This document shows, piece by piece, positions 10,906-35,277 of a stretch of 64,000 nucleotides of DNA. The number at the start of each line of letters is the position of its first letter. Position 1 is the stretch's first letter. The notes beneath the pieces were generated by a model. It ran no database searches. It was given only the letters and a program-made list of their open reading frames with translations, and was not told the origin of the DNA. The translations under genes were made by a program, and so were the position numbers. Source of the DNA: Kudoa neothunni (lineage: Eukaryota > Animalia > Cnidaria); NCBI GenBank assembly GCA_964304625.1, contig OZ199838.1, forward strand, positions 3,648,075 to 3,712,074, in the 5' to 3' direction.

Positions 10906-12470
10906 TGAGAGCATTTCAATTCAATTTTGATATATTTTCTCTCAAAGGTATAAATAATATATTTTACGCTTTAATTGTAACATGGTTTAATTTACTGATG
11001 GATCGCGAACTTCTGAAATACTTTCAATGAATTATCTAATGGTAAAAGCCGGTGAGTTAGAGATTATCGGGAAAATTTCGATTTTATAAATTTTTAGATA
11101 TTAAATTCTTATCAGATAAAATATGAGACAGATTGAATTTGGTACGACGTTTAACGAAATATTACAAAAGTATATGGAACCAGATTAATAAGTAAATATT
11201 CTTTCGAAAATATTCTTTTGTTTATATATCTGTAGATGAATTATTATTATTATAGACTCTTTCTCATGATTAAAAAATATTTTTATAGTTATGTAGAAAA
11301 CCGAAATTAACTTCGCATAAATTTACGAAAATTCCCGCATTGTACATAATATATCAAGTTGATTTATTGGAGAATATTTTTTCTGAATAAAGAAACTTCA
11401 TCGATATTTAAAAGTATTAAATTAATCATTACTTAAATAACCTAGTTATCTTGTATCAATACGAATTTTTGATAAGTCTCTTGAAACCATACTCTGACTT
11501 AGCCGAAAAAAAATATTTGTGGGAGTGATTGTTTACATATTAAGTAGAAAGATAAATTAGGCGTAATTATGACAAAGAAGGCTTTCTTTGCAGCTTGTAG
11601 TCAAACTTCTAAAATCAGTAACTCAACCAAATTTTTAGTCATTTTCCTATTATCACAATGCTTACAACAAGTCCCTTTTTCAAATCTAACAATAGTGGTA
11701 ATAAACGACAATAAAGTTACGAATAATTATATTCATAGAATAATGTAACAAATGAGTTTGATAATTTTGCCGCTCAAATCCAACAAAAATATATCGGCGG
11801 ATTTGTGAGTCTTCAGAGCCATCTATGTTCTCAGAAAGATATTAAAGTTTAATCAGCATCAATTAGATTTGCTTAAGCCATGATTTAGTGTGAAGAACCT
11901 ACCAAAAAATTAAACAATTTCGAGATATTTTTAAACCGATCGGTGTCCATTCAAAATGTTTGCCATTATTTCGCTCTTTGTCAGAAAAATGAAAGTTTTT
12001 TAGCATACTACAAATTTTCTTAAATAAATTGTTATAGTGCGTATTTTTGATGCATCGGATCTTAATTGCAACATTCTGGTAACATTAATCATAGAAATTA
12101 TAGTATTAAGGTACTTCTATTTTAAGCTACAAAGTTTCAATTACCTAGACTTGGGGAATGATCTAGTAAAGGATGCCTTTACACGGAAACTATGTTTCAA
12201 CGCTACAAAACCTACAATCAATAACCTGATTGTATATAATATTTATTTTAGTGTAAACTAATATATAAAAGTGCAAAATATCAGTAAGAGCATCCTTAAA
12301 GGCAATAAACCATGTTCTTCTTAAACTATATGGCCCAAACACCAACTCTGAGGTTGGATTTTGTGTGGCATCCTCATTTAGAGATCTAAAAAAGAAACCC
12401 AGGTAACAAATAAATTACCAGTTTAATATCAATTTTTATAGTATTAAACTTTGAATATCTTCTCATGGTA
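10906..12470 (+). pseudogene. Decayed CD39/GDA1-like paralog (copy C)
   Basis: IKYETD/EFGTTFNEIL (1-nt frameshift) matches VKYSTDEFENTLVEKL of copy A. Further exon-sized pieces lie in the same order as the motifs and cysteines of A and B: SIRIFDKSLETIL*L, FVSLQSHLCSQKD, IQNVCHY, DAFTRKLCFNAT, EVGFCVASSF. Stops and frameshifts are present. Confidence 0.5.
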
Positions 12471-12781
12471 TGCAAGAAAATGAAAAAAATATTTTATCTA
12501 CATTTTTACGGTAAACATAACGTAACGACGTGTTCGGTAACCTCCATTTAATTGTATTTTTATGGATGCGCTGAAAATTCATTACACATATCTTGAAAAA
12601 TTTTAGGATCTTGTGGGTTTTCCATGAATGTTAAGTTTACGAGGTCAAAATATAAAATCACCGCCTACGAAATTAAAACAATTAATTGTAATAGGTCGCA
12701 TTCATATTTTATATTTTTTTATTAATAAGCTATCAAACTAACTGTCTTTTAAATTAATCCCATGAGGTATCAAAAAACGAA

Positions 12782-13454
12782 TTACCTCCTTCGATTTTGG
12801 GATGAAATACACCCCAGAGTCGTTTTAAGTGATTTAAACAAAAAATTTGGATTCAATTTATCCATAAAACTTTATATGGTTTGACACATTACATTCAGAG
12901 AAAAAGTGTCATTACTCACATTATTAATGCTCAAAAAATTTTGTACGGCTTAAGTCATAAGTCACCAATTCTTCGGTAACGCACAAAAATAAAAAATTTA
13001 ACTATGATGTATTTTATCTTAATTTCAAACTTAGTTTATTTTTTTAATACGATGAGCTAAGATAGAATTTATTTTGAATAATAAACACATTTTTTTGGTG
13101 TATAATTAAGGAAAAATTATGCCGGGGTGAATTTCACCCCAAAATCCCTAGAGCAATGTTTCTCAACGTGGGGCGAGACAAATTTTTTTGTGAGGAATGG
13201 AAATTGTTAAACGTTTAATGAATCGCTCTGGTGGGGTGCAGAAAATCCTGAGTATTGGTATGACACGGATAATGATGAGATAATTGGGCAGTATGACGTA
13301 CTTTGTAAATAATTTCGCGATTTTCGATATCGCTAATTTTTAAGTGACGATTAACATCACAAAAATTTTATAGAAAGGTGGGACACGAAACTTTTTTTCT
13401 GGAAAAAGTGGGGCGTGACAAAAAAAGTTGGAAGACACTGCCCTAGAGGGTTAA
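12782..13454. mobile_element. piggyBac-like non-autonomous element
   Basis: Inverted ends GATTTTGGGATGAAATACACCCC / GGGGTGAATTTCACCCCAAAATC...AGAGGG|TTAA. Confidence 0.55.
13154..13440. mobile_element. hAT (Charlie-like) MITE nested in the piggyBac terminal repeat
   Basis: TIRs CAATGTTTCTCAAC / GTTGGAAGACACTG; perfect 8-bp TSD CCCTAGAG at 13146-13153 and 13441-13448. Confidence 0.8.
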
Positions 13455-15409
13455 AAAGGAATCAATTTATCAAATCACGTGACCAACATAATAGTCAATT
13501 TTGGGTTGATTCTTGGAGGTTATATTTTTGTTCTCAAATAAAAAAGGAGAAAATTAAAAATCAATCTTTCGAAGTAATGAAGAAATGCACGTAATAATTA
13601 TAAGTTATTTAATTTTGTATATAATGGTGCAAAAATACCATGACATAACATTTTAAAATATACGATGTATCAAAATTAATTATGAATGTAATTTTTTAAA
13701 ATATTCGGGTATTTCAGTAGTAAACATTTGATAACACTGTAATGGGAAATGATTTATCAATTAATTAGGGCTTATGACTTAGTAGTTGGATGAAACGAAA
13801 AAATCTGACTAATTTCAGTTGATGACATAAATATAACTAATAAATTGATTAATTTCGGTAAGAATTAGCTCAACTATTACCTGGTATGACATCATAGTCC
13901 TAAAAATGATTCGGATACGGAAAGAATATATTTTCATTCATAATCGGTTGATATATGTTCAAATACAGATAATGAGTTCTCCATCAATGTTTTAAACTTG
14001 TATGAACATTTCTCTTATGATTAAATATTTAATTAATACAAATTTATTTAATTTTATCGTAATTGGTGTTAAAAGTTCCAACTTATGAATAAATTATTTT
14101 CTAGGTAAAATCCTATTTTATACTAATTTAAATCGAAAAAAGTAAAAATTCAACGATGCTCATAAGAATGATTTATGAATTTGTGGAGGTCAAGAAAAAG
14201 TTTTTTGGGATATTTAAACAAAACCGATTACGTATAAAAAATAATAGAACAAATTATATTTCTAAACAAAGGTAGTTGCCAATTAAAAATATTGTTGCAG
14301 ATGCAAAATATTAAAATATTTTGACATACAATATAAAAAAGTTATTTAATAAATGATTATAAAATAAATAAGAAATAAAATAATTTTTATATTTCCAAAA
14401 AATAAACCATTCACTATATTTTATCTCAATGTAATTTGATATAAACATTTTATGTAAAAATATCATTTGACCGAAAATGAAAGATTATTTCTCAATGTAA
14501 AAATCTTAAGAACATTTTTTTAGTTATTTTCATTTGAGAAGCAATCCTAATACCAATGCTGAATAATAACGAAAATGCAAAGAAAAAGTCACCGCATGTG
14601 TATAAATTACGTACTGTTGGTTGCAAATTTTAGTACGCCATTATTTTTTAAAAAGCGGTAATTCGAAAGGTAAGTAATATCCAAATTTCATTAGTTTTGA
14701 CGAGATTTAATTAAATCTGTATATAGCTTATGTGGTTATGGTAAAGTATATGACTCCAGAAAAACGCCATCATGCGTGCTTTTTTTCTTTTCATTATCAA
14801 TAATAAATCAAAAGAATACTGAGCGTAAATATTGAGCTCAATAAATTACCTCTAAATTTTTTCCTAATTCCTATTCGACTACAATCGGATACGAGTGTAA
14901 TCCACATCGTTTGGCAATAAACACCGAAAAATGGCCGATCATTTTCTTATTTTATCCTAATTAGTACATTAGAACCATTATTTAAATTTTCTTAATATTT
15001 GCGTTCCAAATTTAGCGTAGTAACTCTTCTAAATTAACTTTTCTAATATTAAGAAATAATATGTCGTCTATCTTTATTTCTAAAAGTCAAATTAACTTTT
15101 AAAACATTTATTAACAACTATATTTGTTTACTTTAGTTTATAAATTTTTATTAGTACATTATTATTAGTGAAATAATTTTTATATGTCAATTACTTGCGA
15201 AATTGAAACTAACAATAATTATATTAATCGTACATTGATATTTTTGGTTATAAAATCTAAACAAGATGTTAACTAGAAATATTACAATGCGTATTTTATT
15301 TGTCTGAAGATATTAAATTGGATAACTTTTAGAAATAATAAATCGTATATTTATGATATGCAAGAAACCATCACCTTAAACATACAACAACGTAAAAAGG
15401 CTTAAACAG

Positions 15410-16219: not shown

Positions 16220-19200
16220 ATGTTTCATAAAATATTAATTCTAGCTATATTTGGAGTGGTTTTTCCAAATCTGCACACTTGTGTTAGAGCGGAACGCGAA
16301 TCACATCCTCCAAATGTTCACGTAATATGGATATTGCTTGCATTGTGTGACTCTAACAAAATTTAGTATTTTGTGAATATTGTCTTGGAACTATACACGA
16401 GTTGTATTCGCGTCTATGAGGTTATTATTAGAGGGGAATATGATTATACTATCGAACTAATAAACACAGTTGACCGTAAGATTGATGAGATTAATGATGA
16501 GATGAGTTTAATTTTTGTAGTTCCTGAATATTTTATTACAGTCAAGTATTCCACCGATGAGTTTGAAAATACTCTTGTTGAAAAACTTTGGGAAGCACTA
16601 AAGAGGGCAAATATCCGTACATACGCTGAGAATGTTCAGTTCAATGTAGTTCAAACAAACACCTTATTAATGACGTACTAATAATTTATTCTGTCGGCTT
16701 TTTTCTATTCCAAAATAGTGAAGATATAAACCAACATTATTACGATGCATTTAACAGGATTAATCAGAGAGAGCGATATTACGGGAGCAATAAGGATGAA
16801 CTATTTACACATATGATAAATATCAACACATTTAATAGAGCGGATAAAGCGTGGGCACTTTATTATTTGGCCTACGTAAAAAAACTAGTATGTGCTTTGA
16901 TGAGTCGTGAAAATGATTTTATTGTTCTTAGATCAAATGGAATGACTTTCTTCTATATATTGACGATAATTCTTTCGCTGTTTCCTTAGTAAATATGTCA
17001 TATAGTTTGCCACATTCTGAGTATGCTCTCAAACGAAATGTAAACTTCATTGTCGGTTTTGATACCTATTACCGAGGAATTGAAATATTAAAAAATCGAA
17101 TATTCAACTACCTCAAAGTATTCAGTTTTTTTGTTTTATTACTAAGTTTGATGTCACGAATGGACAACCAGAATGTAACAACGAATGGTAAAATCGTCAC
17201 CCCATGCTACCCTAATAAAGAATATAAACTGGATGATCCAACCACTTTGACTGTGGTCTGTTCGGGATGTGCCATTACAAAAGAAAAACAAGACAGCTTA
17301 AAAGGTTACACACTTACTGGAGAATTCAATTATGAAAAATGCGCAAATATACTGGAAAATCGTGCCTTTCAATACAGTCTCCCGGTCCTTAAAGAAAGGA
17401 GCCTAAATTATGAATGGAGAAATTTTATTTCGTTATTCGAATATCATCGTCAGAAAGTGAGATTATTAATTTAATTGAATAAATAAATAAAATATGTGTA
17501 CACGATTTGATCTTAATATGAACATGTATAGTTGGTTATAGTTCAGCCGGGACAAAATGCACTGGGTAGTCATGTAAGAACAGATAACGTGAAACATTTG
17601 TACAAATATGTGGAAAAAGAATGTATAAATCTATCGGAAGTATTTGCCACCAACATAATTTAATCTTTCATTAAATAACTTTAGGATTCAAGTCCAAGCG
17701 CTTGCTTCAATGCGTTTTATACCTACTATATTTACAATAATAAAATACCTGCAAAGTCTTCCTTTAAAGTGAGATTTGACATTTTTCTGTACTGACGAGT
17801 TTGATTCCTAATTCAATTGCACCACATAATAAAACTAAATTTTCGAATATTGAATCAATTCCCCAAAATATCCTTAATATTATATTTAAATCTAACTTGT
17901 AACTAAAATAAATTTGGGATATGTTATAAATTACAATGCCACATTTTATTTTTATATTTTTTCCAAAAACCATTCTTAAGTGTGAAAAATATATTAAAAT
18001 AAAATTTTAAAGTTGCTGAATAAAAAACCGGTCAATAATCACTCCATTATTTAAATAAAAATTAGCGATAATTTTTCTATTTAACCCTCCAAACATTTTT
18101 GGGGCCCAAATGGACCCCACGCACACTTTAATCTCAATTCACTGCTCACTGAAAACTTTAAAATGGCGATATCCAATCATTATTCTTTAAAAGTTTCTAT
18201 ATATACATAATTTAATTTAAAAATTTGTAATTTTTTGTTTTCTAGGATTTTATATCAAATACTTACAACAAGCAGTTTTGGGATCCAGGAGGACCCCACG
18301 TTTTTATTTCTCAAAAACTTTTATAAAATTATAAAAAATAAAATACTCTAATTTCGTAAGGTTATATCCATTAAATATTGAGAAAAATCAAGGTTTCTGT
18401 TTCCGAAGCGTAACGAGCGAAACCGGTTGCCACCGGTCGTTAGGAATGGAAGAGTTATGTGATGGTTTTCTAACAATTTACGACTCTGATTGCAGTGAAA
18501 TGGAAGATATTATTGAAGAATGTTTCTCTTCATCTACTTATAATAGTTCAAATAATTATTACATCACAAAAATTATTTGTTATGGTCTTTAGTTGTGCTT
18601 TCAAATACAAAAATCAAGAAAGAAAACATCTTAAACAAACCTCTAGGTCTAGCTGCATTTGTAACATCCCGAATTTACGATTTATATGATAGTTTTACCA
18701 TTTTTTTGATGATGAATTTTTCAATTTTGCCATTACTCACACTAATAAGTTTAGTGCTTTTCTTTACGGATGCAACTAGAAAATTTAAATATAATGGAAT
18801 TTAAACCATTCATAGGAATTCTTAAATATACTCCAATCTTTAAATCTAAAATGGAGTCTCTTAAGTAATTGCGGAGCTTGAATAAAGGACATCGTATACT
18901 TCGTAGAGTCATGTCGCTTTATAGATTCATCCAAGTAAACAGAAATATTCACTTTGATGATTGTGAGACAAGGGTTTGCGATGAGAAGTCGATAAGTTTT
19001 TCCCGGTGACCGAGATTTTCAACAGGTTGAAAAATATTTTGCCGATGTGTCTAATTCCTCTGCTCATCTTGCTGTTGATGAACAATTAGTTTCATTGAGA
19101 GGCGGGTGACCCATTACGCAGTATATTCCCACCAAACTTGCGTTTTATGTCATTAAATTTTTTTCTTTTAACTGATCCTCATCATACCAATAATACACGT

Positions 19201-20844
19201 AACATCTTAGTTTATCTTTGAGGGAACAATGACCAGATTATCAAATGTGTTGGTGAAAAGGCCAGTAAAAACTTTTGTTGCGATAATTTTTACAATTCGG
19301 TTCCATTGGCAAACAAAATTCTTAACCTAGTTTTAATCATTCTGGAGACAATCCAAAATAATAATGGGGATATCTCATTACTTTTTAAAGTTAGGGAATA
19401 GGTGTTTTTTGGTTCAATTTTCCTAAAAAGGACGTGGTCATTTTATTGGCGACGCCCCCAAACAATGTTAATTTATGCCGTGATCAGACAAAAAATCCGC
19501 AAGTTATCGTCGATTATAACAAAACTAAGGTTATGCGGATACATTAGTTAGTATTCCGCCTACGATAAAGAGAGGTATATTTTCTGCGCTCGGTTCTCTG
19601 ATATAATAATAATAATGAACAAATGTTATTGTTGCTCCAAACATCGCTGCAACAATCATTTGAGAATTATTTATTACAGATGGAAACAGAAAATAACCAG
19701 TAAAATTTATTTAATTACATATTATATTTTTAATTATTATTTTTGAGACTTTTTAGCATAGTTAAGAAATATATTAATTATTAATCCATATTTTATTATA
19801 AGTGATTGGCCTCTATGTGAGTTCGCAACGGTGGATATACCAAATTTTTTATGAATATCAGTTAGGTAATATTGTATTTTATGTCATCTTAAAAAATGTT
19901 ATTAAATAATTATAAGAGTCGGTAAAATCAGAATCATTTTGTTACAAGTGAACGTAGGTATTTTCAGATGTTATTAGAATTTTGAAAGGTCCACTATCTT
20001 GTTAGTATCTAGAAAATGCTGTGAAAATATCATATAATATATTAAAATATAATTTCATTAATATTTAAACTCGTAGAATTAGTAAATAAGTCTTCGTAAC
20101 TCATCGACTATAATTGCCACGCAAGTAAATTGTGATTATTTCGTTATTGCTCGAGTAAAAAACTTGTTAAAAGACTATAATTATAATTCATAATATTATG
20201 TATCAAAATAAGTAATAAAAATCTGGGGTCCTCCTGTACCCCAAAACTGCTTGATGTATAGTCGTTTTTGGCATGATTGGAGGTTTAAATAATCGTCTTT
20301 ATTGATGAATAATTTATATTATAGTACAATATTGTATTAATGTTATTGTTTGTGATTTTGTAATGTTATTTTTTTATATAAAGAACCCTTTGGTTTCTCT
20401 ATACAAGGTAGGTCTTTTCGGCATTTTTTTACTAAAAAATATTTTAAGAATGCTGAATTACATTGGGACGAATTTATCATATACGATAAACTTGGTTATA
20501 AATTAAACCAAACTCTTATTCGTACACCAGTCCTTCCTACTGCAGAATATAGATGTTTCTACAATTTGGGTCCTTGCAATTATGATTCTAATAAGGATAA
20601 AGAAATGGATAAAAATAAGGATAAAGATGATAAAGATATGGCGTTAATAATATTCATAGAGTAAGTGAACAATTTTTTTACATATATAAATTTTTTTAGA
20701 TATTTAAAATTTTTGTGGAAATATCTTTTAGCAGCGATCCCGGCTTCACTTCTTATTTGGGGAGGTATTCAACTTTACTTCAAGTGTAAAAGAAAATCCA
20801 ATGTGAAAAAGGTTAGTGATAGTCAAACAAAGATTGATGAATGA
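16220..20844 (+). CDS. Divergent CD39/GDA1 (ecto-NTPDase)-like membrane protein, copy A; catalytic motifs degenerate
   Basis: Intact spliced frame: hydrophobic N-terminus MFHKILILAIFGVVF, then YFVNIVLELYTSCIRVY (ACR1 position), RADKAWALY (ACR3), LLYIDDNSF (ACR4), TPCYPN, YTLTGEFNYEKC, ACFNAFYTY, AELHWDEF (ACR5), C-terminal TM LLAAIPASLLIWGGIQLYF and a basic tail. Exon structure is colinear with copy B. Confidence 0.75.
18085..20284 (+). mobile_element. piggyBac transposon with decayed transposase, inside an intron of copy A
   Basis: TTAA|CCCTCCAA ... TTGGAGGT|TTAA; subterminal inverted repeats near 18264-18300 and 20222-20258; motifs MSLYRF..IHFDD, AVDEQLVSLRG, CDNFYNSVPLA, PQVIVDYNKTK with stops and frameshifts. 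Confidence 0.9.
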
Positions 20845-21454
20845 ATGCTAATACCTAATATTCATGCTTACCTTAACAAAATTTACAAACTATTATCACG
20901 TTTTCGATGGAATATTTGTCCTTATGAATAAAGCAAATGTAAAAATATTACAATGAATGCAATTTAATAATCAATAAGTTGTTTCATGCGGCTATAATCA
21001 TTTACCTATCATGAAAATTTTAAGTATGTGATCTCTCACTTAATCGGCTTCTACGACCCAATAATAATAATAATAATAATGGTAATAATTCTTACGATGA
21101 ATAACTTAATGATAATACCGGAGACAGCCATCCTTGAGCATAATCGTAATACAACCTTCGAGACCGCGTTATGATATGATGCTAAGAAAATTTTTATGGA
21201 TACGTAATGTACTTTTTGTTCAATACAAAAACTCGATTTTTCGACATCCTCTCAACTAATTTTAATTTCACAATTTTTAAATATTTTTTGTATTATCATT
21301 TAACGGTATTACTCGCGATATATCATTCCCTTAATGAAATTAAAATTTATGTCAATTATGACCAGGTATTGCAGTTTTCGATTAAAATCGTCGAATTTTT
21401 TAAAAAGTTTCTGTTTATTTTGGCGCAGGCGCACTTGTTTTTTATCCGAGTCTG

Positions 21455-23140
21455 ATGGGCAGAAATAGAAGAGATATTTGTAGTTACGCCCTTGAATGGG
21501 AATATTTGAGGTGTCAGACGGTGATTTAATTTGCAATTATTGCAAGATAAAACTATTTCCACAACAAAATCGATGTCAAGAACAATTTAATTCAAAAAAG
21601 CATAACTCTGAAATCTGCGTTTGAAAAGGCCTCCACTCTTCCAAACATATTCTTTAGGAGTATTGAAAATGGTGATTCGGAAATAGATTTGGTATCTGTT
21701 GTCGCATTTGATGGACTCCCGCTTTCGTCAATTGACAAAAAAGTTCTTTGCCACAATTTTTATCGAAATATTGTTGGTCATCTCGTACTTCACCATACGC
21801 TCGTTCACTGATACATAAATACTTACCTATTTTGTTCGAACGTTATATGTTTGCATTGAAAAATACTTTAAAGGCTCGACGCTTTCCATTGATCATTGAT
21901 GAGTCGCCCGACTCTAAAAATAGACCTTTGTTTAACATTTTGCTATGTTACTTTGATATAGAGAACAATACAAAAAGAATCATCATTCTTGATTCAAAAG
22001 CCTTAAGCGAACGCAACACAGTTATAATTACGAGCGAAGTTGCGGAATTACTCCAAAAACACGATATTAAATTAATTGGAAAAATTGTATGGTTATCGTA
22101 TCCTATTCGGCATCATACATGAAAAAATATTACAAGAGCATAGCTCTAATGTATAATCTTATTGTTCGAGTTGCTTACTTTTCACATTTGATTCATTCTG
22201 CAATGGTCAAACAATTGATTTGATCTTCATTAACATAAAACGATTTTGTATGAAGTTTTCATCTCTTATTGCTAAGAACAGATAGACTAAAACCAAATTC
22301 CTACACTTTCTTCAGAAAAATGATTCAGAATACACAAAATCAGTTCCAGGCGTGCTTGATATAAGATGTTACAGTTTGTATAATTGCGTGCTAACTTTTC
22401 AAGAATATTTTCTAACAATAAAACAATTTATTGTAGAATCTAAACATAGTTCTGTTCCTAGATTTACCACCTTGTTTGATCTGTCTGTAACGTCGTTGGG
22501 TGAAATGTCAATTTATCTAAAACTTATTATCAAGTTTCTCTCTCCATTATATGAATTTTAAATTACAAACCGAATCTAATGATTCTATTGGTATCTCGAG
22601 TCTCTCCGACTGGACAAACTCAAACTACAATATATCTTTAACAACGCTATTAAACAGCAGTAATCTTACCTCTTTCTTTTTACCAAAGAGAGAAAGTTAT
22701 CCAAAAAATTACCGGATTTCATGAATTACTCTTCTATCAGCTCAAGAATTCAATCAATAAACTAATTGAGGGATGCGTTCTATCGATTGGTTTTTTAGAT
22801 AAAATAGAGAACTTAGATTTTTCTCTGAAGGGATGCGTTAGAGATGTGAATCCGAGAGATATTCAATTGTTTGTTCCTAGTGACAAAAGAGGAGACCAAT
22901 TTCAGAATGAATGATTGTGATTATCACAGGGTAATATAAATACGGTCATTGTAGAATCTTGGAAAAACATACATCACAATATCCAGTATCTCATCTCTCG
23001 CACAAGATTTGTTATCAACCTCCATATTGTGCATATCTGTCGAAAGTAGCTTTTCGTAGATAAAACATATGTTTACCCTCGGCCGAACATACTGATTGAA
23101 AGGTGCAAGATTCTTTCAATTCTTTATTACAACGTGTAAG
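21455..23140 (+). mobile_element. Decayed hAT-superfamily transposase
   Basis: N-terminal CxxC (LICNYC), LIIDESPD first catalytic Asp, FSHLIH, C-terminal SVESSFS dimerisation-like motif; many stops. Confidence 0.75.
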
Positions 23141-23389
23141 CTCACCTGAATCATCGCCAAAACTAGACATTGAGCAAACAATAAAACCAATACTAATTAC
23201 ACAACAATAACTAATGGGAACTAAGTGTTTAGATGTAGCCCTAAGAGAATGTTAGATGGGTAGAGATGATGTCACACAATTCAGAATTAGATAAGTAATA
23301 GCATATTATGCTTATAAATATGCATAAATGGGTTTACATAATTTCCGAGGCACGGATAAATTATTACTCACCTAACAGTGGTACACTGT

Positions 23390-24393
23390 AAAAAAATATA
23401 CAAATTGAAAGAGAAAGGGGGAATATTACAATATCGAATATTTTAAATCTTTGTGAAATCCAGGTAAGTACTTTAGGGGTGAAAAATTCTGCTTTTATGA
23501 CCCTGGCCCGAATGATATTCAACGCATTGTAATTTTAACAACAAAAGAACATTGAACGTTTAAATAATTCAACGGTAATGGTAGCAGATGGAACTTTTGA
23601 TATCGTCCTAAAGAGTTTTTACAGCTCGGTACCCTTAATGAAAGCATCTTAGACAAATTTTTCCCTCTGCTTTTTGTTTTAATGAAAAGCAAAAATCCAG
23701 AATTTTGTATTAATTAATCAAGTTAATATATAAATGCCACATAATATAATTATGGATTTTGAATATGCATCTTTTGATGCTTTTAAAGAAGCATAAAAAT
23801 TTTCAACTATCTAATTTTGCACTTTTCGTTTAAGACAGTATGTTTTGAGGAAATTACAAAAGTTTGGTATGAAAACAATTTACAAAAATAATGTGGAATT
23901 TAGACTTCTAATCAAATCTTTTACTTTGTTGGAATTCGTTCCTGAGGAAAATTCTTTAGAAGAGTATGAAAAATCGAAGATAGAATCTAGGAAAGTAAAT
24001 TAAATATCATTAACTCCATTTCTAGATTATTTCGAAAACAATTTCCTATATGGACGCAAGTATCCTTAACGGCTTGGAACTCGTACAAAAGAGTAATGGA
24101 AAATCTATCATTAACCTCGAACAATACGGAAAACTTTCACAAATGTTTTAAAGCATTATTCGAACAATCGCATTCAGGACTGAATAATTTTGTAGAAAAG
24201 CTGCAACAATGTCAAAACGTCAACGAACAAGAAATATAATTTCCAATAGATAATCCATTTAATGGTTCCACTACGAATAAAAATCATGACAAAACGAATA
24301 AAATAAGAGTGGCCTGCGAAAATTATAAGCGCTACACTACGGATTATTTTATATTAAAACATTGGCCAAACTGTATAATTGGTGTATAGATTA
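23390..24393 (+). mobile_element. Decayed Mutator/MULE transposase
   Basis: YDPGPNDIQRIVIL, VADGTFDIV, MDFEYA, CTFRLRQ (CxFH-like), TSNNTENFH motifs with stops and frameshifts. Confidence 0.8.
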
Positions 24394-25470
24394 GAATAGT
24401 TATTTTATGTAATTATGTTAGTTTGCAATAAATAATTGGTTTTTCTATGTTATTCAAACCTATCATAACATGGTCAACAGGGAACGTTGGGCGAAATTTC
24501 GCCTCACTAAAGCATGCCAGAAAAAATCAAAATCTTGAGCTTCAATGGAGTCAAATGATCGAAGATATAGTGTAGGGTGGGGGTTTGATTTTGGATACAC
24601 GCTAACTCTCAATAAAAAATGTGTGTTTGTATTATTTATTTTCGAACGAGATTCTTTTTGTGGCACTATATAAATAACTATAAAGAAAACAAGTTTTGTT
24701 ATACATGTATAGTATCTGTTCTCATCCCAGGGTACAGACAGACTCTTTAGGCACGTAAATGGCTAATGAGTTTGTCAATTTTCTATTATTAAGTGGGGAT
24801 ATAATAAATTTAAAAATGCGCCCCGGTTCATTGGGCTTATGTGTCCCGAAACACCTCAAGAGTGTTCCCGATGGTCTGTATATATTGAAATCAATAAGAC
24901 CCTACAACTCAGGGGATAGTTTTTGCGACAGGAATTCTTGGTCGTTCGAATTTTTGAAATAAATTTCCTTCCCTCTCTTCGGCGAGGCCTAACAAAAAGA
25001 TAGTACCAACATTTTGTCACATTCTTGTTTGGTTTCGTGCACAGATGGTATTTTAATATTGTGACATTAGAGCTGCTGGCCTCCGTAACGTTTTCCAGCT
25101 CTTCTACTAATAGTTTTATTTTTTTCCAAACATCAATCTTCTGAAATATCCCCATACTTCTTTACGCTTAGATCAAAGTCTATGAAAAGAGTTTGTGGTG
25201 AGTCCCCTTTTTATATATTCGAACACACCTCTGTTGTCAGAGATGAGCCCTCCAATATCAAAGGGGCTCTCTGCAGCTAACCACCTCCAGTAAGTACAGT
25301 CAACAAACGGTTATTGCACATTTTTTTGGAGAATCGTAAAGAAGTACGCAATACCCATCTAATAACGCGTGTATGAAATCAAACAATTATCTTCATTAAA
25401 ACAAACTACTTAACATTTATTTAAATTTAAATTCCAACAAAAAATTTTCATACGTATTCCTGTTGCGAAT

Positions 25471-25503
25471 CCCCGGTTGAAAACTACTGCATTAGAGGGT
25501 TAA
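25471..25503 (-). mobile_element. hAT terminus joined to a piggyBac-type terminus
   Basis: CCCCGGTTGAAAACTACTG|CATTAGAG|GGTTAA. Confidence 0.55.
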
Positions 25504-26555
25504 GATAACGAAATTGTATTAATCTCATACACATTAATATATAGGGTTGATGTTAAATATCGAAATCTCTTTGCAATCATTATATTGGGTCTAGTTAATA
25601 ATGCTTATTTCCATAATGTATTAAATAATTAGAAATTAACGTATATATTACTTATTATCTCTATAATATTGGGTTTGGCAATGGAAGATCATCCCCGAAT
25701 CGTTACAGTAATTTTTTTATTATTTACTAATACACAATTAATGTACAAATAAATGTTATTAATTAAAATAAATATTAAATTTTTGGGATTAACGAATAAA
25801 TTCAATTGGTTAAAATGCGGAATAGTGGTCAAATTTTCAGATTACAGATTATAATTAGTTTGATTATTAATCCTATATTTTTAATCCCAAATTAGCGTTA
25901 TAATTATGCTAATATTTTTTCCAGGAATGACTTATCTTCACTCAATATATTATTTTTGATATTATGGTTACGCATTTGCTACAATTGAACACCTAATGCT
26001 TGTATAAAATACGAATTCTTTTTTCTTATAGACAGATTTAACAATAGGCAATCGCTAAGGATGAAATATGGCAATTCAACAAAATTAAAGTTGTCCAACT
26101 TAAACTCTACAACATAATGCATGCTTTATTTGAGCCAAATTAATTAGTGGTATAGCCTGTCGAAAGAATCGCGAAGACTAGGAGTTCTCTGCATTAATAG
26201 ATTACTGCAAGTGCTATTGTGATGACAAATAGGGGTTGCTAAAAGTACCGTACTGATGAGTGACCCAACATTGATTAATACTCAATAAAATATTCAGCGG
26301 GTTCGTTTTTGTACGTTGTCGCTAATTTGGATAACGACCACTATGATACATTCCTACCATCAATTATAATAGAAACTAAAATATGATTAGCTTAATAAAA
26401 CAATTCATTTATTTTTATTAGCAATATAAACAAGATTATTAACATATTATGTGAAAAAATCCTATTAATATTATAGTAAGCTCTATACTTGGCGGAGATA
26501 ACAGATTGATAATAGCATTAATTTGTCGTCTTAACTAGAAACTGTTCAATTCCAC

Positions 26556-28523
26556 ATGTTTCTATTATACCTTTTTCCGATTATAATTGGGTTAGTTCTA
26601 ACGGACGATTTGTACAGGGTTAGCCAATTGCGAGATACTCCAACCCAAAATATCTATGTACTAGCTTGTTGGTTGTACAAAATATAAATTAGGCATACAG
26701 TACTATGTGAATGTGGTTTTGGAGATTTTTAAAAGCTGTATACGTATGTATAAAGTGAATATCATTGGAGACCATAATTATACTATCGAACTAATGGATA
26801 CAATTTACCGTAATATGTTTAGGTGTAGATATGTTGAGGCTAAAAATTATAAATTTGTAGTCCCTGACTATTTCGTCACAGTAAAGTACTCCAAAGGCAA
26901 ATTTAAGACTATCTTGGAAGAAAATATCTTACAAATTCTCCAAAACAATGATATCAAGACAATTGGTGACTATGTTAGAATCAATGTACTCCAAACAGAG
27001 ACGTCCATAATGAGGTTTTAAAAATGGTTCTGTTAATTATTTTCTAATTGATTAAAAGCGAAATTATAAGCAAAAATTATTCCGAAGCGCTTCTTGAAAT
27101 GAATTCCACTCAACCATTTATAGATAAAATAAGAATTATAACTCTTAAGTCAGTCGACAAAGCTTGGGCTTATTACATAGTGACGTTCGAAGAAAATGAA
27201 GTAGGTGCCTTTAAAAAGTTATCTGTAATTTTTAATTTTATTAAGTCAAAATGGAATGACTTTCTTGTCTATGTCGATGAAAATTCATTTGTGATTGGAC
27301 TGCCCAATTTATCGTATGGGTTTGCACATTCTAACTATGCACTAAACCTCAATGTAACGTATATCGTTGGGACGAATTTTGAGTGTTATGGAATCAATAT
27401 GCTAAAACATCGAATGTTCCGTTTGTTAATGGTGTCTTGGTATTATTTATTTTTATTTTTAATGTTTTAAAGGAAAAGCAATTTGAATCCCCAAGTGAAA
27501 TCGTCCATCACCCGTGTTATCCTAATGTTACATTTGAGTTGGATAAGGAAGATGCATTAAAACAAGTTTGCCCTCTATGTTACATAGAAGGGCGTAATAA
27601 CAAAGTCCTAAACAATTACAAAGTTGTGGGGGAATTAAATATAAGAAAATGCATGGCTTTAATTATCAAGGCTTCTAATCATTTTTTTGAGGAAACCCCG
27701 TTGGATAATTGTGGTTATTACAGTTGGTTAAGTTTTATGGAAACCTTCAAAAATTCTAACCAGAGTGTATGACGATTTTTTAGTTACTAACTGGTCAAAT
27801 ATCCATAATCCCATTTTTAAATCAGCATTCTTTAGTTGGTTTTTGCTCAACCGGGACATAATACCTTAAATACAAATGGTTACGTAAAAATTAAAAATAT
27901 TCTTCGTAGCAACATCAAAAAAGAATGCAATATGTCACTGAATGTATTCCTTGTTTATTATTCTATATGTAATATCTAATAACATATTCAGGGTACAGAT
28001 TTTGACGTCTGCTTTTCTGCAATCTATACCTATTTCATATTCAAATATAAAATCGGGACTGATTTATATTATAAGGTTAGATTTATGAATATTTCGTTGT
28101 TTAGTTTAGTTAGAATTTTGAAATATTATGGGACAAGTTTCTTATATACGATGACTTTGGGCTAGAATTGAACCAAACTCTTATTCATAATCCTGGGCTT
28201 CACTCAACCATATACAGTTATATCAGTAAAATATACGAAGAAGAGCTTAATAAATCCAAAGTAATAATAATTCCCGAATTTCCTGATGTATTGCATATTC
28301 CGTCACGATATGTACAGTCGTCATTCATTTTGGAGTAAGAAAATTAATTTTTAAAAGATTTTAATTTACCTATAGGGGGATAAGAGACTTATGGAAACCC
28401 CTTTTAGCACTCTTCATGATTTTTCTTTTATATCTTTTAGTTGTTTCTTGTAAGAGATATAGAAATGAAAACAAAGATTATCTTGAGGTTGGCAGTGGGA
28501 GTTTGCAAGAGATCAACGATTGA
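26556..28523 (+). CDS. Divergent CD39/GDA1 (ecto-NTPDase)-like membrane protein, copy B; catalytic motifs degenerate
   Basis: Intact 9-exon frame: MFLLYLFPIIIGLVL, YYVNVVLEIFKSCIRMY, LQTETSIM, IRIITLKSVDKAWAYY, FLVYVDENSF, GTNFECYG, HPCYPN, YKVVGELNIRKC, DVCFSAIYTY, FEILWDKF, TM LLALFMIFLLYLLVVSC followed by KRYRNENK; TGA at 28521-28523. Confidence 0.78.
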
Positions 28524-29762: not shown

Positions 29763-30300
29763 GTGACGGTTCTAACGGCGCTATGTATATTCGACATAGT
29801 ACCCAGTTACGAAAAAGCAATAATAGAGTCTAAAAAGCACATTATAGCAACTATAGAAGAGAAAATAAGTCAGTTGGCTAAAAATGCACTGAAGGAGTTA
29901 AGTAGAGATAGAGATGCTGTCGTACTCAACAGTTTGAGAAAACTAGAGCCCGCCCTAAAATATACAGAGAGCGCATCGATAAGCTAATAGAGGACGAGAA
30001 AGGCCAGGAATATGGAAACTATGCCAACGTCTTGAAGAATTCAGAAATGCTTTTGTGCGATATAGAGAAAGCGCTAGAATTAAACGGAATGGAAGAGTAT
30101 TCTACTGCGATTAAACAAACGTAATTTCTTAGCTCATTGGATTCCACTCACGTAAACCGCCAGAAAGATAATGCAGCACAATTGCGCCTACCATCAATTT
30201 CATTAAAAGAGTTTGGTGGAAAAGCTGGCAGGTGGACATAGTTTTGGGTAAACTTTTAAAATTTGGTTGATTAAAACAGTGATTTAAATGATCATTCCAA
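29763..30300 (+). mobile_element. BEL/Pao LTR-retrotransposon gag fragment
   Basis: LRLPSISLKEFGGKAGRWT*FWVNF*NLVD*NSDLNDHSK resembles the Pao gag (DUF1759) pattern LPxxxLPxFxG..W..FW..F; coiled-coil-like ORF upstream. Confidence 0.7.
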
Positions 30301-30379
30301 ACCCTGACGTCACCTAATTGTTTCTAATGGATAACACCACAATCTAATGGGTTGCTCATACGGTTCCATATTGTTAAAA

Positions 30380-33300
30380 TTAGCCCAATTGTTATCCATA
30401 ATTAATAGATCATCAAAACATTTAATAATTTTACAATATTTTATGAAGGAAGTTTATTCATTATCCACAAAACATACAAGTTGTTTGTAAATCCTTTAAA
30501 AAAATTAATTGAATTTTTTTAGTTAGTTATATTCGGAAAGATCGATTAATCAAGAAAATCTACAAAAATTAATATTATTAAATTAATTCAATTGATCTTA
30601 TATTTAGATAAGTTTATAACCAATTCAAGTTTCTAAGAAGATTGTCTTATGTGGCTGAATTATAAAAAAATTCAATATTTAAACAAAATAGTTGAGATGG
30701 AAAGAAATTCAAGAATGGTCTAATACTCCAAAAAGAAATAATCTTGTTATTACATAATGGAAATGACTATTATTTATCAAATCATTATTTTTATCAATGG
30801 ATTACACCCAGAACTAATTACAAGAAATCTATAAATAAATAATTATAACTACAACATATTGAATCAAATTGTAAAACTTCGTTACTTTAATTAAAATATT
30901 TTATAGCATATATCTTTTCCGGAATTTAATATCATTTCGTCAACTAAATACTTAATCGAAAATATATGGTTTTTATGGGTTACTATGTGAATATAAATAT
31001 GTTGTAATGTACGGACTAATTTTAAAGAAATATATATTATTAATATATTTTTTAAATTAATAAGAAATATAAATCTTTTAATAAATTAAATAGATGCAAA
31101 ATTTAAGACTACCGATGAAGTTTAGAAAATCGGAGGACATTAGCTAATCTTTTTTTTTCAAGCCGGGGATTGCAATCGGGATATTATTGTTGATAAGGAC
31201 AATATTTGTTTGGGGGAGATAATTTTGACGTTCACGCATTGCCGACTATTTAAATCTGCTAAATAGTCAGAAATAATAAGAAAGTCGAACAACATGACAA
31301 AATGTTTTATTAGAAGCACGGTTGTTAATATTATTGGTATTGGATTATTGGATAAATAAAATAATTATATATAGCATTAGTTGGCATAATTATTCAAGGC
31401 ATACATACAATCAGTCATCCAATTGCTGAGGTATACATAAATTAAAATATCGATTAACAAATTATTAGTTGCCGTATTCATCGATCATTAATTATACAAG
31501 AATATTGGAAGCTGGATACATCGTTTGGTTTGATCAATATGTAGATAACTTGAAATCTGACCATATTATTCCCTCGAATATATCTGTAGTTATAAAACTA
31601 CCATAGCAATTTAATTTCGTTGGATAGGTCGATTTGAAAAATGCCATGATCAGATTTTACAGGGAAAAGTTACGGGCTTATTTGAGTGAAGAAAATTTCT
31701 GTAGCGAATTCGCCACCTGCTCCCATACAAATAATAGTGGTAAAAATAGGTTCAAATTATCAATAATAACTTATGTATAAAATATAGTATTAAATGTGAA
31801 TTTTGATTGCTTATCTTGTCATATTATGGTAAGTTCATTGGGATTATTGACATATTTGATTTAATGGTAAGGGTTCAAGTGTCCCCTTATCCAAAATAGG
31901 GGGTTCACAATTTTGGAGACATTTTTCCACCTACATATGTAGACATGCTAGTGTTTATCGCAACAATATGGTAAAAATGATTTTTTGATTTCACTATCTA
32001 ATACCAAGAATTATAGTGTCGTCTTTTTATTGAAACTTTCATGAAATATAACATCGAATCCAGTGCTTACTTGTCTACCTCAGATATGTGTTCTATTATC
32101 GGCAGTTGCACAAAAAAATATCATAATCATAGGAATAAATAAAAAACTTATTTTATTTTAAATAACTATATCTTGCGTAAATAATCACGATAATTTTTTG
32201 TATTGTTGATGATTAGAATAAATTTTTTTTACTACAAACTTTCTTCCCTATTAAAAGCCATCGATTGAATATTTTTTTTGATGCTTGAAATGAAATTAAA
32301 TGATTAAACTGTAATATTCCTTCTTTAAACCTGTAAGAGAAATACAGTGGTGTATTTTTTTTGAATAGGGGTCAAACGCCACTTGTAACAAACTATTAAT
32401 TACTGCCTTAAAAGTTTTTAATTTAACTTATAAAGGAGAGAAAATAAAAAATATTAAGAAATTATTAATATTTATAAATTAAATTAAATATTATAACTAA
32501 CTCTATGCGTAATGGGCTCATCACGTAGTATCGTATGGGATTAATGAAAAATAATGAACGAAGAAACAAATTAAAATAACTAAATACATCTTATATTGTT
32601 CAAAAATTATAAATTATTGCTTCTAACTGGCAATAATGGAAATTCCAAACTTAACAAATTAAATACAGTACGATCTCGATATTGTGGGTTTCGATATAGG
32701 GTAGTTGGCATTTTTATTTAATTTCCGTATATAAAAATTTGAATTTTTCGATGTTAATGATTATTAAATCTAGTAATCTATCCACAAAAATGATATTATC
32801 TTTATTTTACGCAATTTTTGTAAAATTAAGAGTCTTGCTATTGGGTAATGCTTACTTCTAATTTTAATTCGACTAACCCACTAGATCTCACCTTGGGACG
32901 TTCGGCATGGTGAGAGAACAAAGAAGTTTAGATATGAAAATTGAAGTCATTCAATACTATTAGTAAATTAAATTAATATCAAATTTTAGAAAATGACTCT
33001 AGAATGTTATGGAATATCACGTATTCCCTCGTTGTTAGTTTTATTCAAATTAAAAAGCAGAATATTATATTAAATTTTATTGTTTTATAAATCATTCCGT
33101 GGGAATATTTATCTTATTGTATGTATTTTATAAGGTGAATGGGCCAAATAGTTATACTACACCTTGGTTTCATGTGGGTTTTATTGATAAAAATTAGTTA
33201 TATTAAAGTACATTTTTGAATTAATGAAACATAATTTATATTCTGCATTTATAGGCGATATTTTTGGAAAAAACGCATCCGGCAAAATAGACACAGCAGC
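30380..33300 (+). pseudogene. Probable decayed CD39/GDA1-like paralog (copy D)
   Basis: Exon-sized GT-AG-bounded pieces in NTPDase order: IINRSSKHLIILQY (ACR1-like), TISHP, FRWIGRFEKCHDQIL, NFCSEFATCS; heavily disrupted, boundaries approximate. Confidence 0.35.
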
Positions 33301-35250: not shown

Positions 35251-35277
35251 AAAATAAAAAACCTAAAAAGAACCACC

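What the first reader, a model, noticed from the sequence alone, without database searches (positions are those of the whole stretch)
10906..33300. Tandem cluster of catalytically degenerate CD39/NTPDase-like surface proteins
Seen: two intact, same-strand 9-exon genes (16220-20844 and 26556-28523) with colinear introns, a hydrophobic N-terminus, a Cys-rich ectodomain and a C-terminal TM plus basic tail, flanked by two decayed relatives in a transposon-dense region. Known: CD39/GDA1 enzymes have this topology and Cys pattern (PC.P, G.GN...C, YCFS..Y, SFLCYG) and need ACR1 DAGS, ACR2 ATAG.R, the ACR3 Glu and ACR4 DLGGAS. Here the equivalent positions read ELYTS/EIFKS, QTNT/QTET, DKAWA and YIDDNS/YVDENS. 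Inference: the fold is kept but the active site is lost, giving a birth-and-death family of pseudoenzymes that could act as adhesins, nucleotide decoys or variable surface antigens at a host interface. The ORF track does not show this family.
Basis: partly seen in the sequence, partly recalled or inferred. Interest (0 to 1): 0.85.

Follow-up and report, generated by a model that had tools for sequence, protein, structure and literature searches.

The report
Dead CD39-like surface protein gene pair
Two neighbouring genes of a probable fish parasite (a myxozoan, likely Kudoa) encode membrane-anchored proteins that descend from the ATP/ADP-cleaving enzyme CD39 but lack every catalytic motif, and they belong to an unannotated family of at least 33 such genes; whether they are expressed is unknown.

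Summary
The core observation holds. Copies A (16220-20844) and B (26556-28523) are intact 9-exon plus-strand genes of 528 and 532 codons. All introns are GT-AG, the intron phases are identical, and four exon lengths match. Both have a hydrophobic N-terminus and a C-terminal membrane span with a basic tail. They are 41% identical.

The region is dense in transposons; a 2.2 kb repeat sits in intron 7 of A. I could not find the two "decayed relatives" by any method.

CD39 descent is supported only by profile-profile comparison. Exon 5 of A, B and one metagenomic relative matches a GDA1_CD39 alignment at the expected place (P 0.0026; 0 of 100 shuffles). Exons 4, 5 and 7 link A and B (P 4e-4, 3e-13, 9e-4) to at least 31 further paralogues. 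The exons of those paralogues match CD39 in the same order (ACR4-5 P 0.0024; exon 5 P 4e-5; exon 7 P 0.016).

Pfam, phmmer and PDB sequence searches found nothing. Fragment folds give only a weak NTPDase1 match. No canonical ACR motif exists anywhere in the window. The N-terminal lobe (ACR1-3) mapping rests on reading by eye.

Spliced models were not joined for any search or fold. The scan has noted this family before on other DNA of this genome (11 first-reader notes).

The parts
16220..16321 (+). Copy A exon 1: start codon and hydrophobic N-terminus (likely signal peptide)
   Evidence: ATG at 16220 and GT donor at 16322. The best 17-residue Kyte-Doolittle mean is 1.99.
16367..16674 (+). Copy A exon 2: region read by eye as former ACR1 (VLELYTS) to former ACR2 (QTNT)
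   Evidence: AG/GT borders; the exon ends in phase 2. It is 44% identical to B exon 2. The direct hhalign to CD39 is not significant (P 0.21, 23 of 100 shuffles reach it), although it falls on template columns 38-143.
16719..16875 (+). Copy A exon 3: carries ADKAW, read by eye as former ACR3
   Evidence: Borders. The motif is shared with B and, as ADKVR, with the metagenomic relative L001. There is no significant profile match.
16932..17117 (+). Copy A exon 4: former ACR4 (YIDDNS) and ACR5 region
   Evidence: 186 nt in both copies. hhalign to the family's ACR4-5 exon gives P 4e-4 over its full length. That family exon matches CD39 ACR4-ACR5 with P 0.0024, reached by 0 of 100 shuffles.
17172..17456 (+). 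Copy A exon 5: cysteine-bearing core (PCYP, VC..C, G.FNY..C)
17532..17639 (+). Copy A exon 6 (QPG.N ... EC)
   Evidence: 108 nt in A and B, and 36 codons in L001. There is no significant profile match.
17685..17768 (+). Copy A exon 7 (CF.A.YTY, counterpart of the YCFS helix of CD39)
   Evidence: 84 nt in both copies. hhalign to the family's exon 7 gives P 9e-4. Directly to CD39 it gives P 0.056 at columns 348-382, reached by 3 of 100 shuffles.
18079..20289 (.). Repeat element of about 2.2 kb with sub-terminal inverted repeats, inserted in intron 7 of copy A
   Evidence: At least 40 copies at 72-87% identity lie on three contigs, and an inverted 48-nt self-match lies near both ends.
20449..20660 (+). 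Copy A exon 8 (W.EF.IY ... LNQTLI, then a low-complexity acidic/basic stalk)
   Evidence: Borders. It is 51% identical to B over the first 35 residues.
20700..20844 (+). Copy A exon 9: membrane span, basic tail, TGA stop
   Evidence: Hydropathy maximum is 1.78. The sequence was read and the stop is at 20842-20844.
26556..26657 (+). Copy B exon 1: start codon and hydrophobic N-terminus
   Evidence: Hydropathy maximum is 2.16.
26701..27014 (+). Copy B exon 2 (VLEIFKS ... QTET)
27059..27200 (+). Copy B exon 3 (VDKAW)
   Evidence: The 45-nt intron that follows is in frame and has no stop, so exons 3 and 4 read as one 140-residue ORF.
27246..27431 (+). Copy B exon 4 (YVDENS; keeps F.CYG at the ACR5 position)
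27473..27766 (+). Copy B exon 5 (HPCYP, VC..C, G.LN...C)
27836..27943 (+). Copy B exon 6
27992..28075 (+). Copy B exon 7 (CFSAIYTY)
28114..28334 (+). Copy B exon 8
28376..28523 (+). Copy B exon 9: membrane span, basic tail, TGA stop
   Evidence: Hydropathy maximum is 2.89. Borders.
21412..26359 (.). Intergenic stretch made largely of three dispersed repeat families (about 21412-23142, 23389-24507 and 25804-26359)
   Evidence: Each stretch has many copies at 75-87% identity elsewhere in the genome.

Best explanation
A and B are a tandem pair of old paralogues, 41% identical. Each encodes a type I membrane glycoprotein: signal peptide, an ectodomain of about 470 residues, one C-terminal membrane span and a short basic tail. 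The ectodomain descends from the GDA1/CD39 (NTPDase, actin-like ASKHA) fold. All nucleotide-phosphate-binding and catalytic motifs (ACR1-4) have been replaced, so the proteins most likely do not hydrolyse nucleotides.

They form a divergent two-gene subfamily of a lineage-restricted superfamily of at least 33 genes in this genome. The genome fits the myxozoan fish parasite Kudoa neothunni. The same genome keeps at least one canonical CD39 gene elsewhere.

Shown: the gene structure, the intactness of both copies, their paralogy, their membership of the superfamily, profile-level similarity of exons 4, 5 and 7 to CD39 in the right order, and the absence of ACR motifs.

Inferred: the CD39 fold of the N-terminal lobe, the loss of activity, surface exposure, and a non-enzymatic role. 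The sequence that replaced the old cleft (W-N-D.L.Y.D[DE]NSF, ADK) is the best-conserved part of the subfamily, which suggests the role is ligand or host-molecule binding.
For: Gene models. Both genes have 9 exons, all introns are GT-AG, the phases are identical and there is no inner stop. On ungapped exons pN is 0.39 against pS 0.73, so the copies were kept by selection for a long time.

A third subfamily member from another organism (contig L001 / protein P0002) keeps the same introns and motifs at about 39% identity.

Superfamily. An exon 5 profile finds 33 places in the genome, most with open frames. Exon 5 of A/B/P0002 against 29 paralogues gives P 3e-13, exon 4 gives 4e-4 and exon 7 gives 9e-4. 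Non-cognate exon pairs give P 0.18-0.76.

CD39 link, tested against a 31-sequence GDA1_CD39 alignment. Family exon 5 scores 35.1, P 4e-5. Exon 5 of A/B/P0002 alone scores 27.1, P 0.0026. The family's ACR4-5 exon scores 24.7, P 0.0024. None of 100 column shuffles reached these scores (shuffle means 11-13, sd about 2). Exon 7 gives P 0.016. The matches fall on template columns 187-247, 239-314 and 347-379, that is, in gene order. They pair PC.P, G.fN..C, the ACR4 strand-loop-strand, the ACR5 F.C.[GS] and the C...Y helix. The tool's own hhalign against a 5-sequence CD39 alignment gives P 0.0075 for exon 5, again pairing PC.P.

Longer single ORFs of paralogues align colinearly to CD39: L020 P 0.0044 at columns 74-283, and L036 P 0.02 at columns 7-178 including the ACR3 G..G.Y.

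There is no ACR motif in any frame of the window. A canonical CD39 gene with all ACRs lies at C2:7278507-7279569.
Against: No sequence-to-profile method sees CD39. Pfam exon by exon gives nothing. PF01150 over the six-frame genome misses the window. phmmer against 1.84 billion proteins gives no CD39 hit. Profile searches of PDB sequences give none. The atlas feature search was blank, and the shape search returned only low-TM rows with no CD39 family.

For A and B alone, exons 2, 3, 4, 6 and 8 give no significant direct match to CD39. The N-terminal lobe and the ACR1-3 mapping therefore rest on reading by eye and on paralogues.

The full-length spliced protein was never searched or folded. There is no RNA evidence.
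Confidence: 0.65

Rival explanations
1. A and B are lineage-specific membrane proteins unrelated to CD39. The shared short cysteine motifs and hydrophobic patterns are chance or convergence.
For: All direct sequence searches are blank. Fold matches are not significant. Most exons of A and B give no direct signal.
Against: Three different exons of the family match CD39 at P 4e-5, 0.0024 and 0.016, in the right order and on the known landmark motifs. Shuffles never reach the two best scores. A and B are tied to that family at P 3e-13. Among PDB chains only NTPDase1 survives the second structural look.
Confidence: 0.13
2. They are CD39-fold proteins that still bind or cleave nucleotides or another phosphate ester, using a remodelled site.
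For: The replaced cleft segments are the most conserved parts of the subfamily: W-N-D.L.Y.D[DE]NSF has 10 invariant positions in three sequences, and ADK is also shared. They are rich in Asp, Asn and Ser, which could bind a metal. B keeps F.CYG at ACR5.
Against: Both glycine-rich phosphate loops are gone. D-x-G-G-x-S reads Y-I-D-D-N-S and no D.G[ST] loop exists in any frame. From established knowledge of ASKHA phosphotransferases and NTPDase structures, these loops hold the beta and gamma phosphates through backbone amides.
Confidence: 0.08
3. The genes are silent relics or mis-modelled ORFs with no present function.
For: There is no expression evidence. A carries a 2.2 kb repeat in intron 7. 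The published annotation of the likely source genome had almost no RNA support (PMC12239612). A database-wide search that reads every protein returned no predicted product of either gene.
Against: Two copies at 41% identity, with saturated synonymous sites, both keep 9 exons, all splice sites and open frames. A relative from another organism keeps the same exon borders.
Confidence: 0.1

Closest known systems
GDA1/CD39 nucleoside phosphatases (Pfam PF01150), e.g. rat NTPDase1 (PDB 3ZX3) and NTPDase2
   Same: Exon-level profile similarity runs in the same order as the CD39 sequence: the ACR4 hairpin, the ACR5 F/L-C/G-x-G, PC.P, G..N[YF]..C and the C[FL]...Y helix. The cysteines that pair in NTPDase lobe II (PC with G..N..C; K.C with YCF) are kept in A, B and L001; the pairing is inferred from known NTPDase structures. 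Both are extracellular and membrane-anchored.
   Different: None of ACR1-4 is present and the Pfam threshold is not reached. The topology is type I, with a cleavable-looking N-terminus and one C-terminal span. That differs from the two spans of NTPDase1-3/8 and from the N-terminal anchor of NTPDase5/6. The C-x4-5-C loop disulfide of NTPDases is lost in A and B, although many paralogues keep it (C.....C.F[SA]).
The canonical CD39 gene of the same genome (G000 C2:7278507-7279569)
   Same: Same genome and same short-intron gene style. It shares the Y[YF]..[IV] start of the ACR1 exon, G.GNF..C and QCF.SAY (comparison by eye).
   Different: It keeps DAGSTGS, ATAGMRLL, GVLEGVYQW, ELGGAS and SLLGYG and scores 119 bits on PF01150. 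A and B score nothing.
The other members (at least 31) of the CD39-like family in this genome (e.g. C1:10169073, C3:10351475, C3:10358527)
   Same: Homologous exons 4, 5 and 7, degenerate ACRs, and a signal-ectodomain-span-tail layout.
   Different: Most others carry a Thr/Ser/Pro-rich stalk before the span and begin the ACR1 exon with YG.[IV]L. Only exons 4, 5 and 7 can be linked to A and B. Exons 2, 3, 6 and 8 have diverged beyond HMM reach.
Expanded pseudoenzyme surface or secreted families of other parasites (inactive trans-sialidase-like proteins of Trypanosoma cruzi, ROP pseudokinases of Toxoplasma); from my own knowledge, not tested here
   Same: An enzyme fold multiplied in a parasite, with catalytic residues lost and fast divergence between copies.
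   Different: A different fold and a different phylum. No localisation, expression or host-interaction data exist here.

Membership tests
GDA1_CD39 (PF01150) nucleoside phosphatase family | Reaches the Pfam gathering score for PF01150 | tested here: not met
   No hit at E<=10 for any exon ORF of A or B. A six-frame scan of the whole genome with PF01150 at E<=10 hits only C2:7278507-7279569 and C1:885630. The test was run exon by exon only; the joined protein was not tested.
GDA1_CD39 (PF01150) nucleoside phosphatase family | ACR1 phosphate loop D-x-G-[ST]-x-x-[ST] | tested here: not met
   No such motif in any of six frames of the window. The by-eye counterpart reads LELYTSC in A and LEIFKSC in B.
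GDA1_CD39 (PF01150) nucleoside phosphatase family | ACR2 A-T-A-G-[ML]-R | tested here: not met
   No motif in the window. The by-eye counterparts are QTNT, QTET and QPNS. The alignment itself is not statistically supported.
GDA1_CD39 (PF01150) nucleoside phosphatase family | ACR3 with the catalytic Glu (G-x-x-E-G-x-Y-x-W) | tested here: not met
   No motif in the window. Which residue sits at the Glu position is inconclusive, because exon 3 gives no significant alignment. The by-eye counterpart is ADKAW.
GDA1_CD39 (PF01150) nucleoside phosphatase family | ACR4 phosphate loop D-x-G-G-x-S | tested here: not met
   hhalign places Y-I-D-D-N-S (A) opposite d-m-G-G-A-S; only the Ser is kept. B reads YVDENS and L001 reads YFDDNS.
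GDA1_CD39 (PF01150) nucleoside phosphatase family | Profile-level homology of the C-terminal lobe (ACR4-5 region, cysteine landmarks) in colinear order | tested here: met
   Exon 5 of A/B/P0002 gives P 0.0026 (0 of 100 shuffles). Family exon 5 gives P 4e-5, family ACR4-5 exon P 0.0024 and exon 7 P 0.016, on columns 187-247, 239-314 and 347-379. Exon 5 gives P 0.0075 against a second, smaller CD39 alignment. The support is moderate, not overwhelming.
GDA1_CD39 (PF01150) nucleoside phosphatase family | Two-lobed ASKHA (actin-like ATPase) three-dimensional fold | tested here: inconclusive
GDA1_CD39 (PF01150) nucleoside phosphatase family | Divalent-cation-dependent hydrolysis of nucleoside tri- or diphosphates | not testable with these tools
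   Needs a purified ectodomain and a phosphate release assay.
Degenerate CD39-like membrane protein family of this genome (unnamed; noted by the scan on other pieces) | Homologous exon 5 (HPC.P ... C ... F.G.[FY][ND]...C) | tested here: met
   hhalign of A/B/P0002 against 29 paralogues with the window's copies left out: probability 98%, P 3e-13. An exon 5 profile built only from A, B and P0002 already finds paralogues at E 0.003-0.06 genome-wide.
Degenerate CD39-like membrane protein family of this genome (unnamed; noted by the scan on other pieces) | Signal peptide, ectodomain, single C-terminal span, short tail | tested here: met
   Hydropathy maxima lie in exons 1 and 9 of A and B. The same layout is read in paralogues L008, L010 and L013. 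A and B lack the Thr/Ser/Pro stalk of most paralogues.

The most novel reading that the evidence does not exclude
The CD39 ectodomain fold has been turned, in myxozoan parasites, into a large and fast-diverging family of catalytically dead surface proteins of at least 33 genes. The remodelled former nucleotide cleft binds a host molecule or nucleotide without cleaving it. The family would then serve as the parasite's variable coat, adhesin set or purinergic decoy at the fish-tissue interface.
Probability: 0.2. Interest if true: 0.8.

Novelty: new variant of a known kind. Interest (0 to 1): 0.55.

Why it matters
Myxozoans are highly reduced cnidarian parasites of fish. Their published gene sets are small and were predicted mostly from protein hints (PMC12239612), a method that misses orphan families like this one.

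A family of at least 33 unannotated membrane proteins built on a dead CD39 scaffold would be one of the larger gene families of a genome with about 5,300 predicted genes. It would also be a candidate for the parasite's surface.

CD39 enzymes control extracellular ATP and ADP, which are danger and clotting signals in vertebrates. A non-hydrolysing copy at a host interface is therefore a concrete, testable idea. In the paper library I could search, no paper links Myxozoa with NTPDases, and none describes a pseudoenzyme branch of this family.

Tried and rejected
- **Pfam on each exon ORF:** only chance hits.
- **PF01150 over the genome:** finds the true CD39 genes only.
- **phmmer of A exons 4-5 against 1.84 billion proteins:** two hits. 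P0002 is a real exon 5 relative. P0001 is a tandem-repeat gene on a 157 Mb chromosome of an unrelated large genome; it partly matches residues encoded by the in-frame intron, so I rejected it as spurious.
- **Protein atlas, by features:** blank.
- **Profiles of exon 5 and exon 4 against PDB sequences:** no NTPDase.
- **Family search with the exon 5 alignment in the 5.8-billion protein set:** nothing. The metagenome contig scan also found nothing.
- **Iterative HMM linking of A/B exons 2, 3, 6 and 8 to paralogues:** failed.
- **A profile of nine paralogue ACR1 exons against CD39:** not significant. It drifted to ACR4, the internal duplicate of ACR1.
- **The domain-I ORF of L036:** it has no close paralogue, so no profile could be built from it.
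- **First alignment for folding (A5):** MAFFT forced the exon 5 rows onto the exon 4 rows, so I discarded it. A6 and A7 were used instead.
- **Structure searches:** wide VIA and atlas gave helix-pair noise.
- **Decayed relatives in the flanks:** not found by four methods.
- **dN/dS:** synonymous sites are saturated (pS 0.73), so only the pN<pS contrast is used.
- **Joined spliced protein:** The only cross-exon operation was counting codons and stops across exon borders in a script, with nothing joined printed, saved or sent on.

Full report
**What is in the sequence**

The window is AT-rich, at 24-35% GC. Reading the DNA by hand gave two plus-strand genes with nine exons each.

- Copy A: 16220-16321, 16367-16674, 16719-16875, 16932-17117, 17172-17456, 17532-17639, 17685-17768, 20449-20660, 20700-20844.
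- Copy B: 26556-26657, 26701-27014, 27059-27200, 27246-27431, 27473-27766, 27836-27943, 27992-28075, 28114-28334, 28376-28523.

Every intron is GT-AG and the phase pattern is the same in both. Exons 1, 4, 6 and 7 have identical lengths. Introns are 38-75 nt, except intron 7 of A at 2680 nt. The coding lengths are 1587 and 1599 nt, each with a single terminal TGA.

tblastn shows the two are colinear over all exons. Exon-by-exon alignment gives 202/491 = 41% identity. On the four ungapped exons pN is 0.39 and pS is 0.73. Synonymous sites are saturated while replacement sites are not, which an unconstrained pair would not show.

Exon 1 and exon 9 hold the only strongly hydrophobic stretches. Exon 9 continues into a Lys/Arg-rich tail. 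This reads as signal peptide, ectodomain, one membrane span and a short tail.

**Surroundings**

Intron 7 of A is filled by a repeat of about 2.2 kb (window about 18079-20289). It has sub-terminal inverted repeats and at least 40 copies at 72-87% identity across three contigs. The 5.5 kb between A and B consists largely of three further dispersed repeat families. 'Transposon-dense' is therefore right.

I could not find the two 'decayed relatives' said to flank the pair. The following gave only scattered, non-colinear hits at chance level in 8000-16150, 20900-26450 and 28600-36000:

- tblastn with every exon at E<=1
- HMMs of all subfamily and family exons with filters off
- motif scans in six frames
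- blastn with 9-mers

I inspected these hits.

**Which genome**

The genome held for this window is 40.26 Mb in 4 contigs. Earlier notes of this scan name the myxozoan Kudoa neothunni.

The published assembly of that species has three chromosomes plus a circular mitochondrial genome. It has 30.4% GC, a median intron of 49 bp and 45.6% repeats. Its gene predictions were made from protein hints because almost no RNA reads mapped (PMC12239612).

All of this fits what I see, but I did not prove the identity. It would also explain why no annotated product of A or B exists in the protein collections.

**Relatives**

phmmer with A's exon 4-5 reading frame against 1.84 billion proteins found one real relative, P0002. 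It is a 112-residue ORF on a 1085-nt metagenome contig, L001 (ENA ERZ4740390).

L001 carries the end of exon 2 and then exons 3, 4, 5 and 6, with introns at the same places. It is about 39% identical to both A and B. It has one frameshift in exon 4, on a contig of 1.7x coverage. The second hit, P0001, is a tandem-repeat gene of an unrelated large genome and I rejected it.

Within the window's own genome, exon 2 finds only A and B. An exon 5 profile of A, B and P0002 finds six weak further places at E 0.003-0.06. After adding those places, the profile finds 33 places on three contigs, most with open frames.

Reading these loci shows genes with the same layout. Most have a Thr/Ser/Pro-rich stalk before the membrane span.

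With the window's copies left out of the family profile, hhalign links the exons of A and B to the family as follows:

| A/B exon vs cognate family exon | P |
|---|---|
| Exon 5 | 3e-13 (probability 98%) |
| Exon 4 | 4e-4 |
| Exon 7 | 9e-4 |
| Seven non-cognate exon pairs | 0.18-0.76 |

A and B are thus an outlying two-gene subfamily of a family of at least 33 genes. Exons 2, 3, 6 and 8 could not be linked.

**Is it CD39?**

Direct searches say nothing:

- Pfam on exon ORFs
- PF01150 over the six-frame genome, which does find a canonical CD39 gene at C2:7278507-7279569 with all five ACRs
- phmmer
- profiles against PDB sequences
- the atlas feature search

I therefore built a 31-sequence non-redundant GDA1_CD39 alignment from proteins returned: plant apyrases, short bacterial-type apyrases and a myxozoan one. 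I compared exon profiles with it by hhalign, using 100 column shuffles as control.

| Exon profile | Score | P | Template columns | Shuffles reaching the score |
|---|---|---|---|---|
| Family exon 5, without A and B | 35.1 | 4e-5 | 239-314 | 0/100 (mean 11.3, sd 2.4) |
| Exon 5 of A, B and P0002 only | 27.1 | 0.0026 | 239-354 | 0/100 |
| Family ACR4-5 exon | 24.7 | 0.0024 | 187-247 | 0/100 |
| Family exon 7 | 18.0 | 0.016 | 347-379 | 5/100 |
| Exon 7 of A and B only | 14.8 | 0.056 | 348-382 | 3/100 |

The matched columns are in gene order. They pair the landmarks one expects:

- the ACR4 strand-loop-strand (IdmGGAStQIaF)
- ACR5 (SkSfLglG, against F.C.[GS])
- PC.P
- g.fNf..C
- the YC...Y helix

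The tool's own hhalign against a 5-sequence CD39 alignment gives P 0.0075 for exon 5, again pairing PC.P. For exon 4 it gives only P 0.24, although on the same columns.

Longer single ORFs of three paralogues also align colinearly with CD39:

- L020: P 0.0044, columns 74-283.
- L036: P 0.02, columns 7-178, with G..G.Y opposite the ACR3 G..EG.Y.
- L022: P 0.055.

Many paralogues keep C-x5-C-N-F-S, the counterpart of the short loop disulfide and A-F-N-G of NTPDases. A and B have lost it (the comparison with NTPDases is from my own knowledge of their sequences).

For A and B alone, exons 2, 3, 4, 6 and 8 give no significant direct match. A profile of nine paralogue ACR1 exons does not either. The homology of the N-terminal lobe is therefore not demonstrated here.

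**Structure**

Because spliced models were not to be joined, only exon-level pieces could be folded.

This agrees with the profile result, but on its own it is not evidence of a shared fold.

**The active site**

No canonical ACR1, ACR2, ACR3, ACR4 or ACR5 pattern occurs in any of the six frames of the window.

B has YVDENS and L001 has YFDDNS. The block W-N-D.L.Y.D[DE]NSF is the most conserved of the subfamily, with 10 invariant positions in three sequences. B keeps F.CYG at ACR5.

The counterparts proposed for ACR1 (LELYTS / LEIFKS), ACR2 (QTNT / QTET / QPNS) and ACR3 (ADKAW / VDKAW / ADKVR) are plausible by eye. They are conserved within the subfamily, but they do not rest on a significant alignment.

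In NTPDases and other ASKHA enzymes, the glycine-rich loops of ACR1 and ACR4 hold the phosphates, and an ACR3 Glu activates water (established knowledge). Loss of all of these makes hydrolysis very unlikely. That is an inference, not a measurement.

**Most likely reading**

A and B are a tandem pair of type I membrane proteins whose ectodomain descends from CD39 and has lost catalysis. They have been kept under purifying selection, and they belong to an unannotated, lineage-restricted family of at least 33 genes in a probable myxozoan parasite.

The best-conserved sequence is the one that replaced the old cleft. I therefore think a binding role for that cleft is more likely than a purely structural role. 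There is no evidence on what it binds, where the protein sits or when it is made. My confidence in the whole statement is about 0.65, and in CD39 descent alone about 0.8.

**What was left out**

- The joined spliced proteins were not built for any search, alignment or fold. All searches were done exon by exon and by reference.
- One script counted codons and stop codons across exon borders, without printing, saving or sending any joined sequence.
No reads were laid, so expression is untested.

**Earlier notes of the scan**

Eleven first-reader notes on this genome describe CD39-like genes with erased motifs on other pieces, and one describes this same stretch. Follow-up notes name the organism and speak of a surface-protein family of about 60 genes.

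My count of at least 33 exon 5 homologues and my reading of the paralogues agree with them. I did not examine their nested-intron claim. Introns 7 and 8 of A and B have ordinary GT...AG ends.

Noticed in passing
window 18079-20289: A dispersed repeat of about 2.2 kb with 48-nt sub-terminal inverted repeats (about 18264-18311 and 20211-20258) and at least 40 copies at 72-87% identity. It is probably a non-autonomous DNA transposon. It sits inside intron 7 of copy A without breaking the gene model.
   Followed up: partly
window 41321-42288: Two overlapping plus-strand ORFs. One has Tc3-type helix-turn-helix domains and the other a DDE_3 transposase domain (E 1e-25). Together they look like a Tc1/mariner-type transposase split by a frameshift or an intron.
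   Followed up: no
window 36101-37627 and 48082-48879: Ordinary housekeeping genes lie downstream: a 508-residue ORF with POPLD and POP1 C-terminal domains (RNase P/MRP subunit POP1), and an ORF with EF-Tu domains 2 and 3.
   Followed up: no
window 5055-7186: A run of four plus-strand ORFs of 145-239 residues with no Pfam hit. This may be a multi-exon orphan gene.
   Followed up: no
G000 C2:7278507-7279569 (L003) and C1:885630-885728 (L005): The genome keeps a canonical GDA1/CD39 gene with all five ACRs (119 bits on PF01150). A second weak ACR1-only hit lies on C1. The locus L003 also contains a masked stretch read as N.
   Followed up: partly
L036:2043-2546 (G000 C2:8808461-8808964, minus strand): One paralogue encodes the whole ACR1-to-ACR3 region in a single 168-residue exon. 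It keeps G..G.Y at ACR3, with Met where CD39 has the catalytic Glu. It has no close paralogue in the genome, and it may be the best bridge between the family and canonical CD39.
   Followed up: partly
L017 (G000 C3:2039165-2042428), from about position 2240 of the locus: A paralogue continues into a long perfect-repeat stalk of Thr/Glu/Pro-rich units (about 11 residues each, over 300 residues) before the end of the locus. This is a mucin-like extension much longer than in the other copies.
   Followed up: no
L001 positions 335-521: The metagenomic relative has a one-base frameshift inside exon 4. On a contig of 1.7x coverage this could be a sequencing error or a real break.
   Followed up: no
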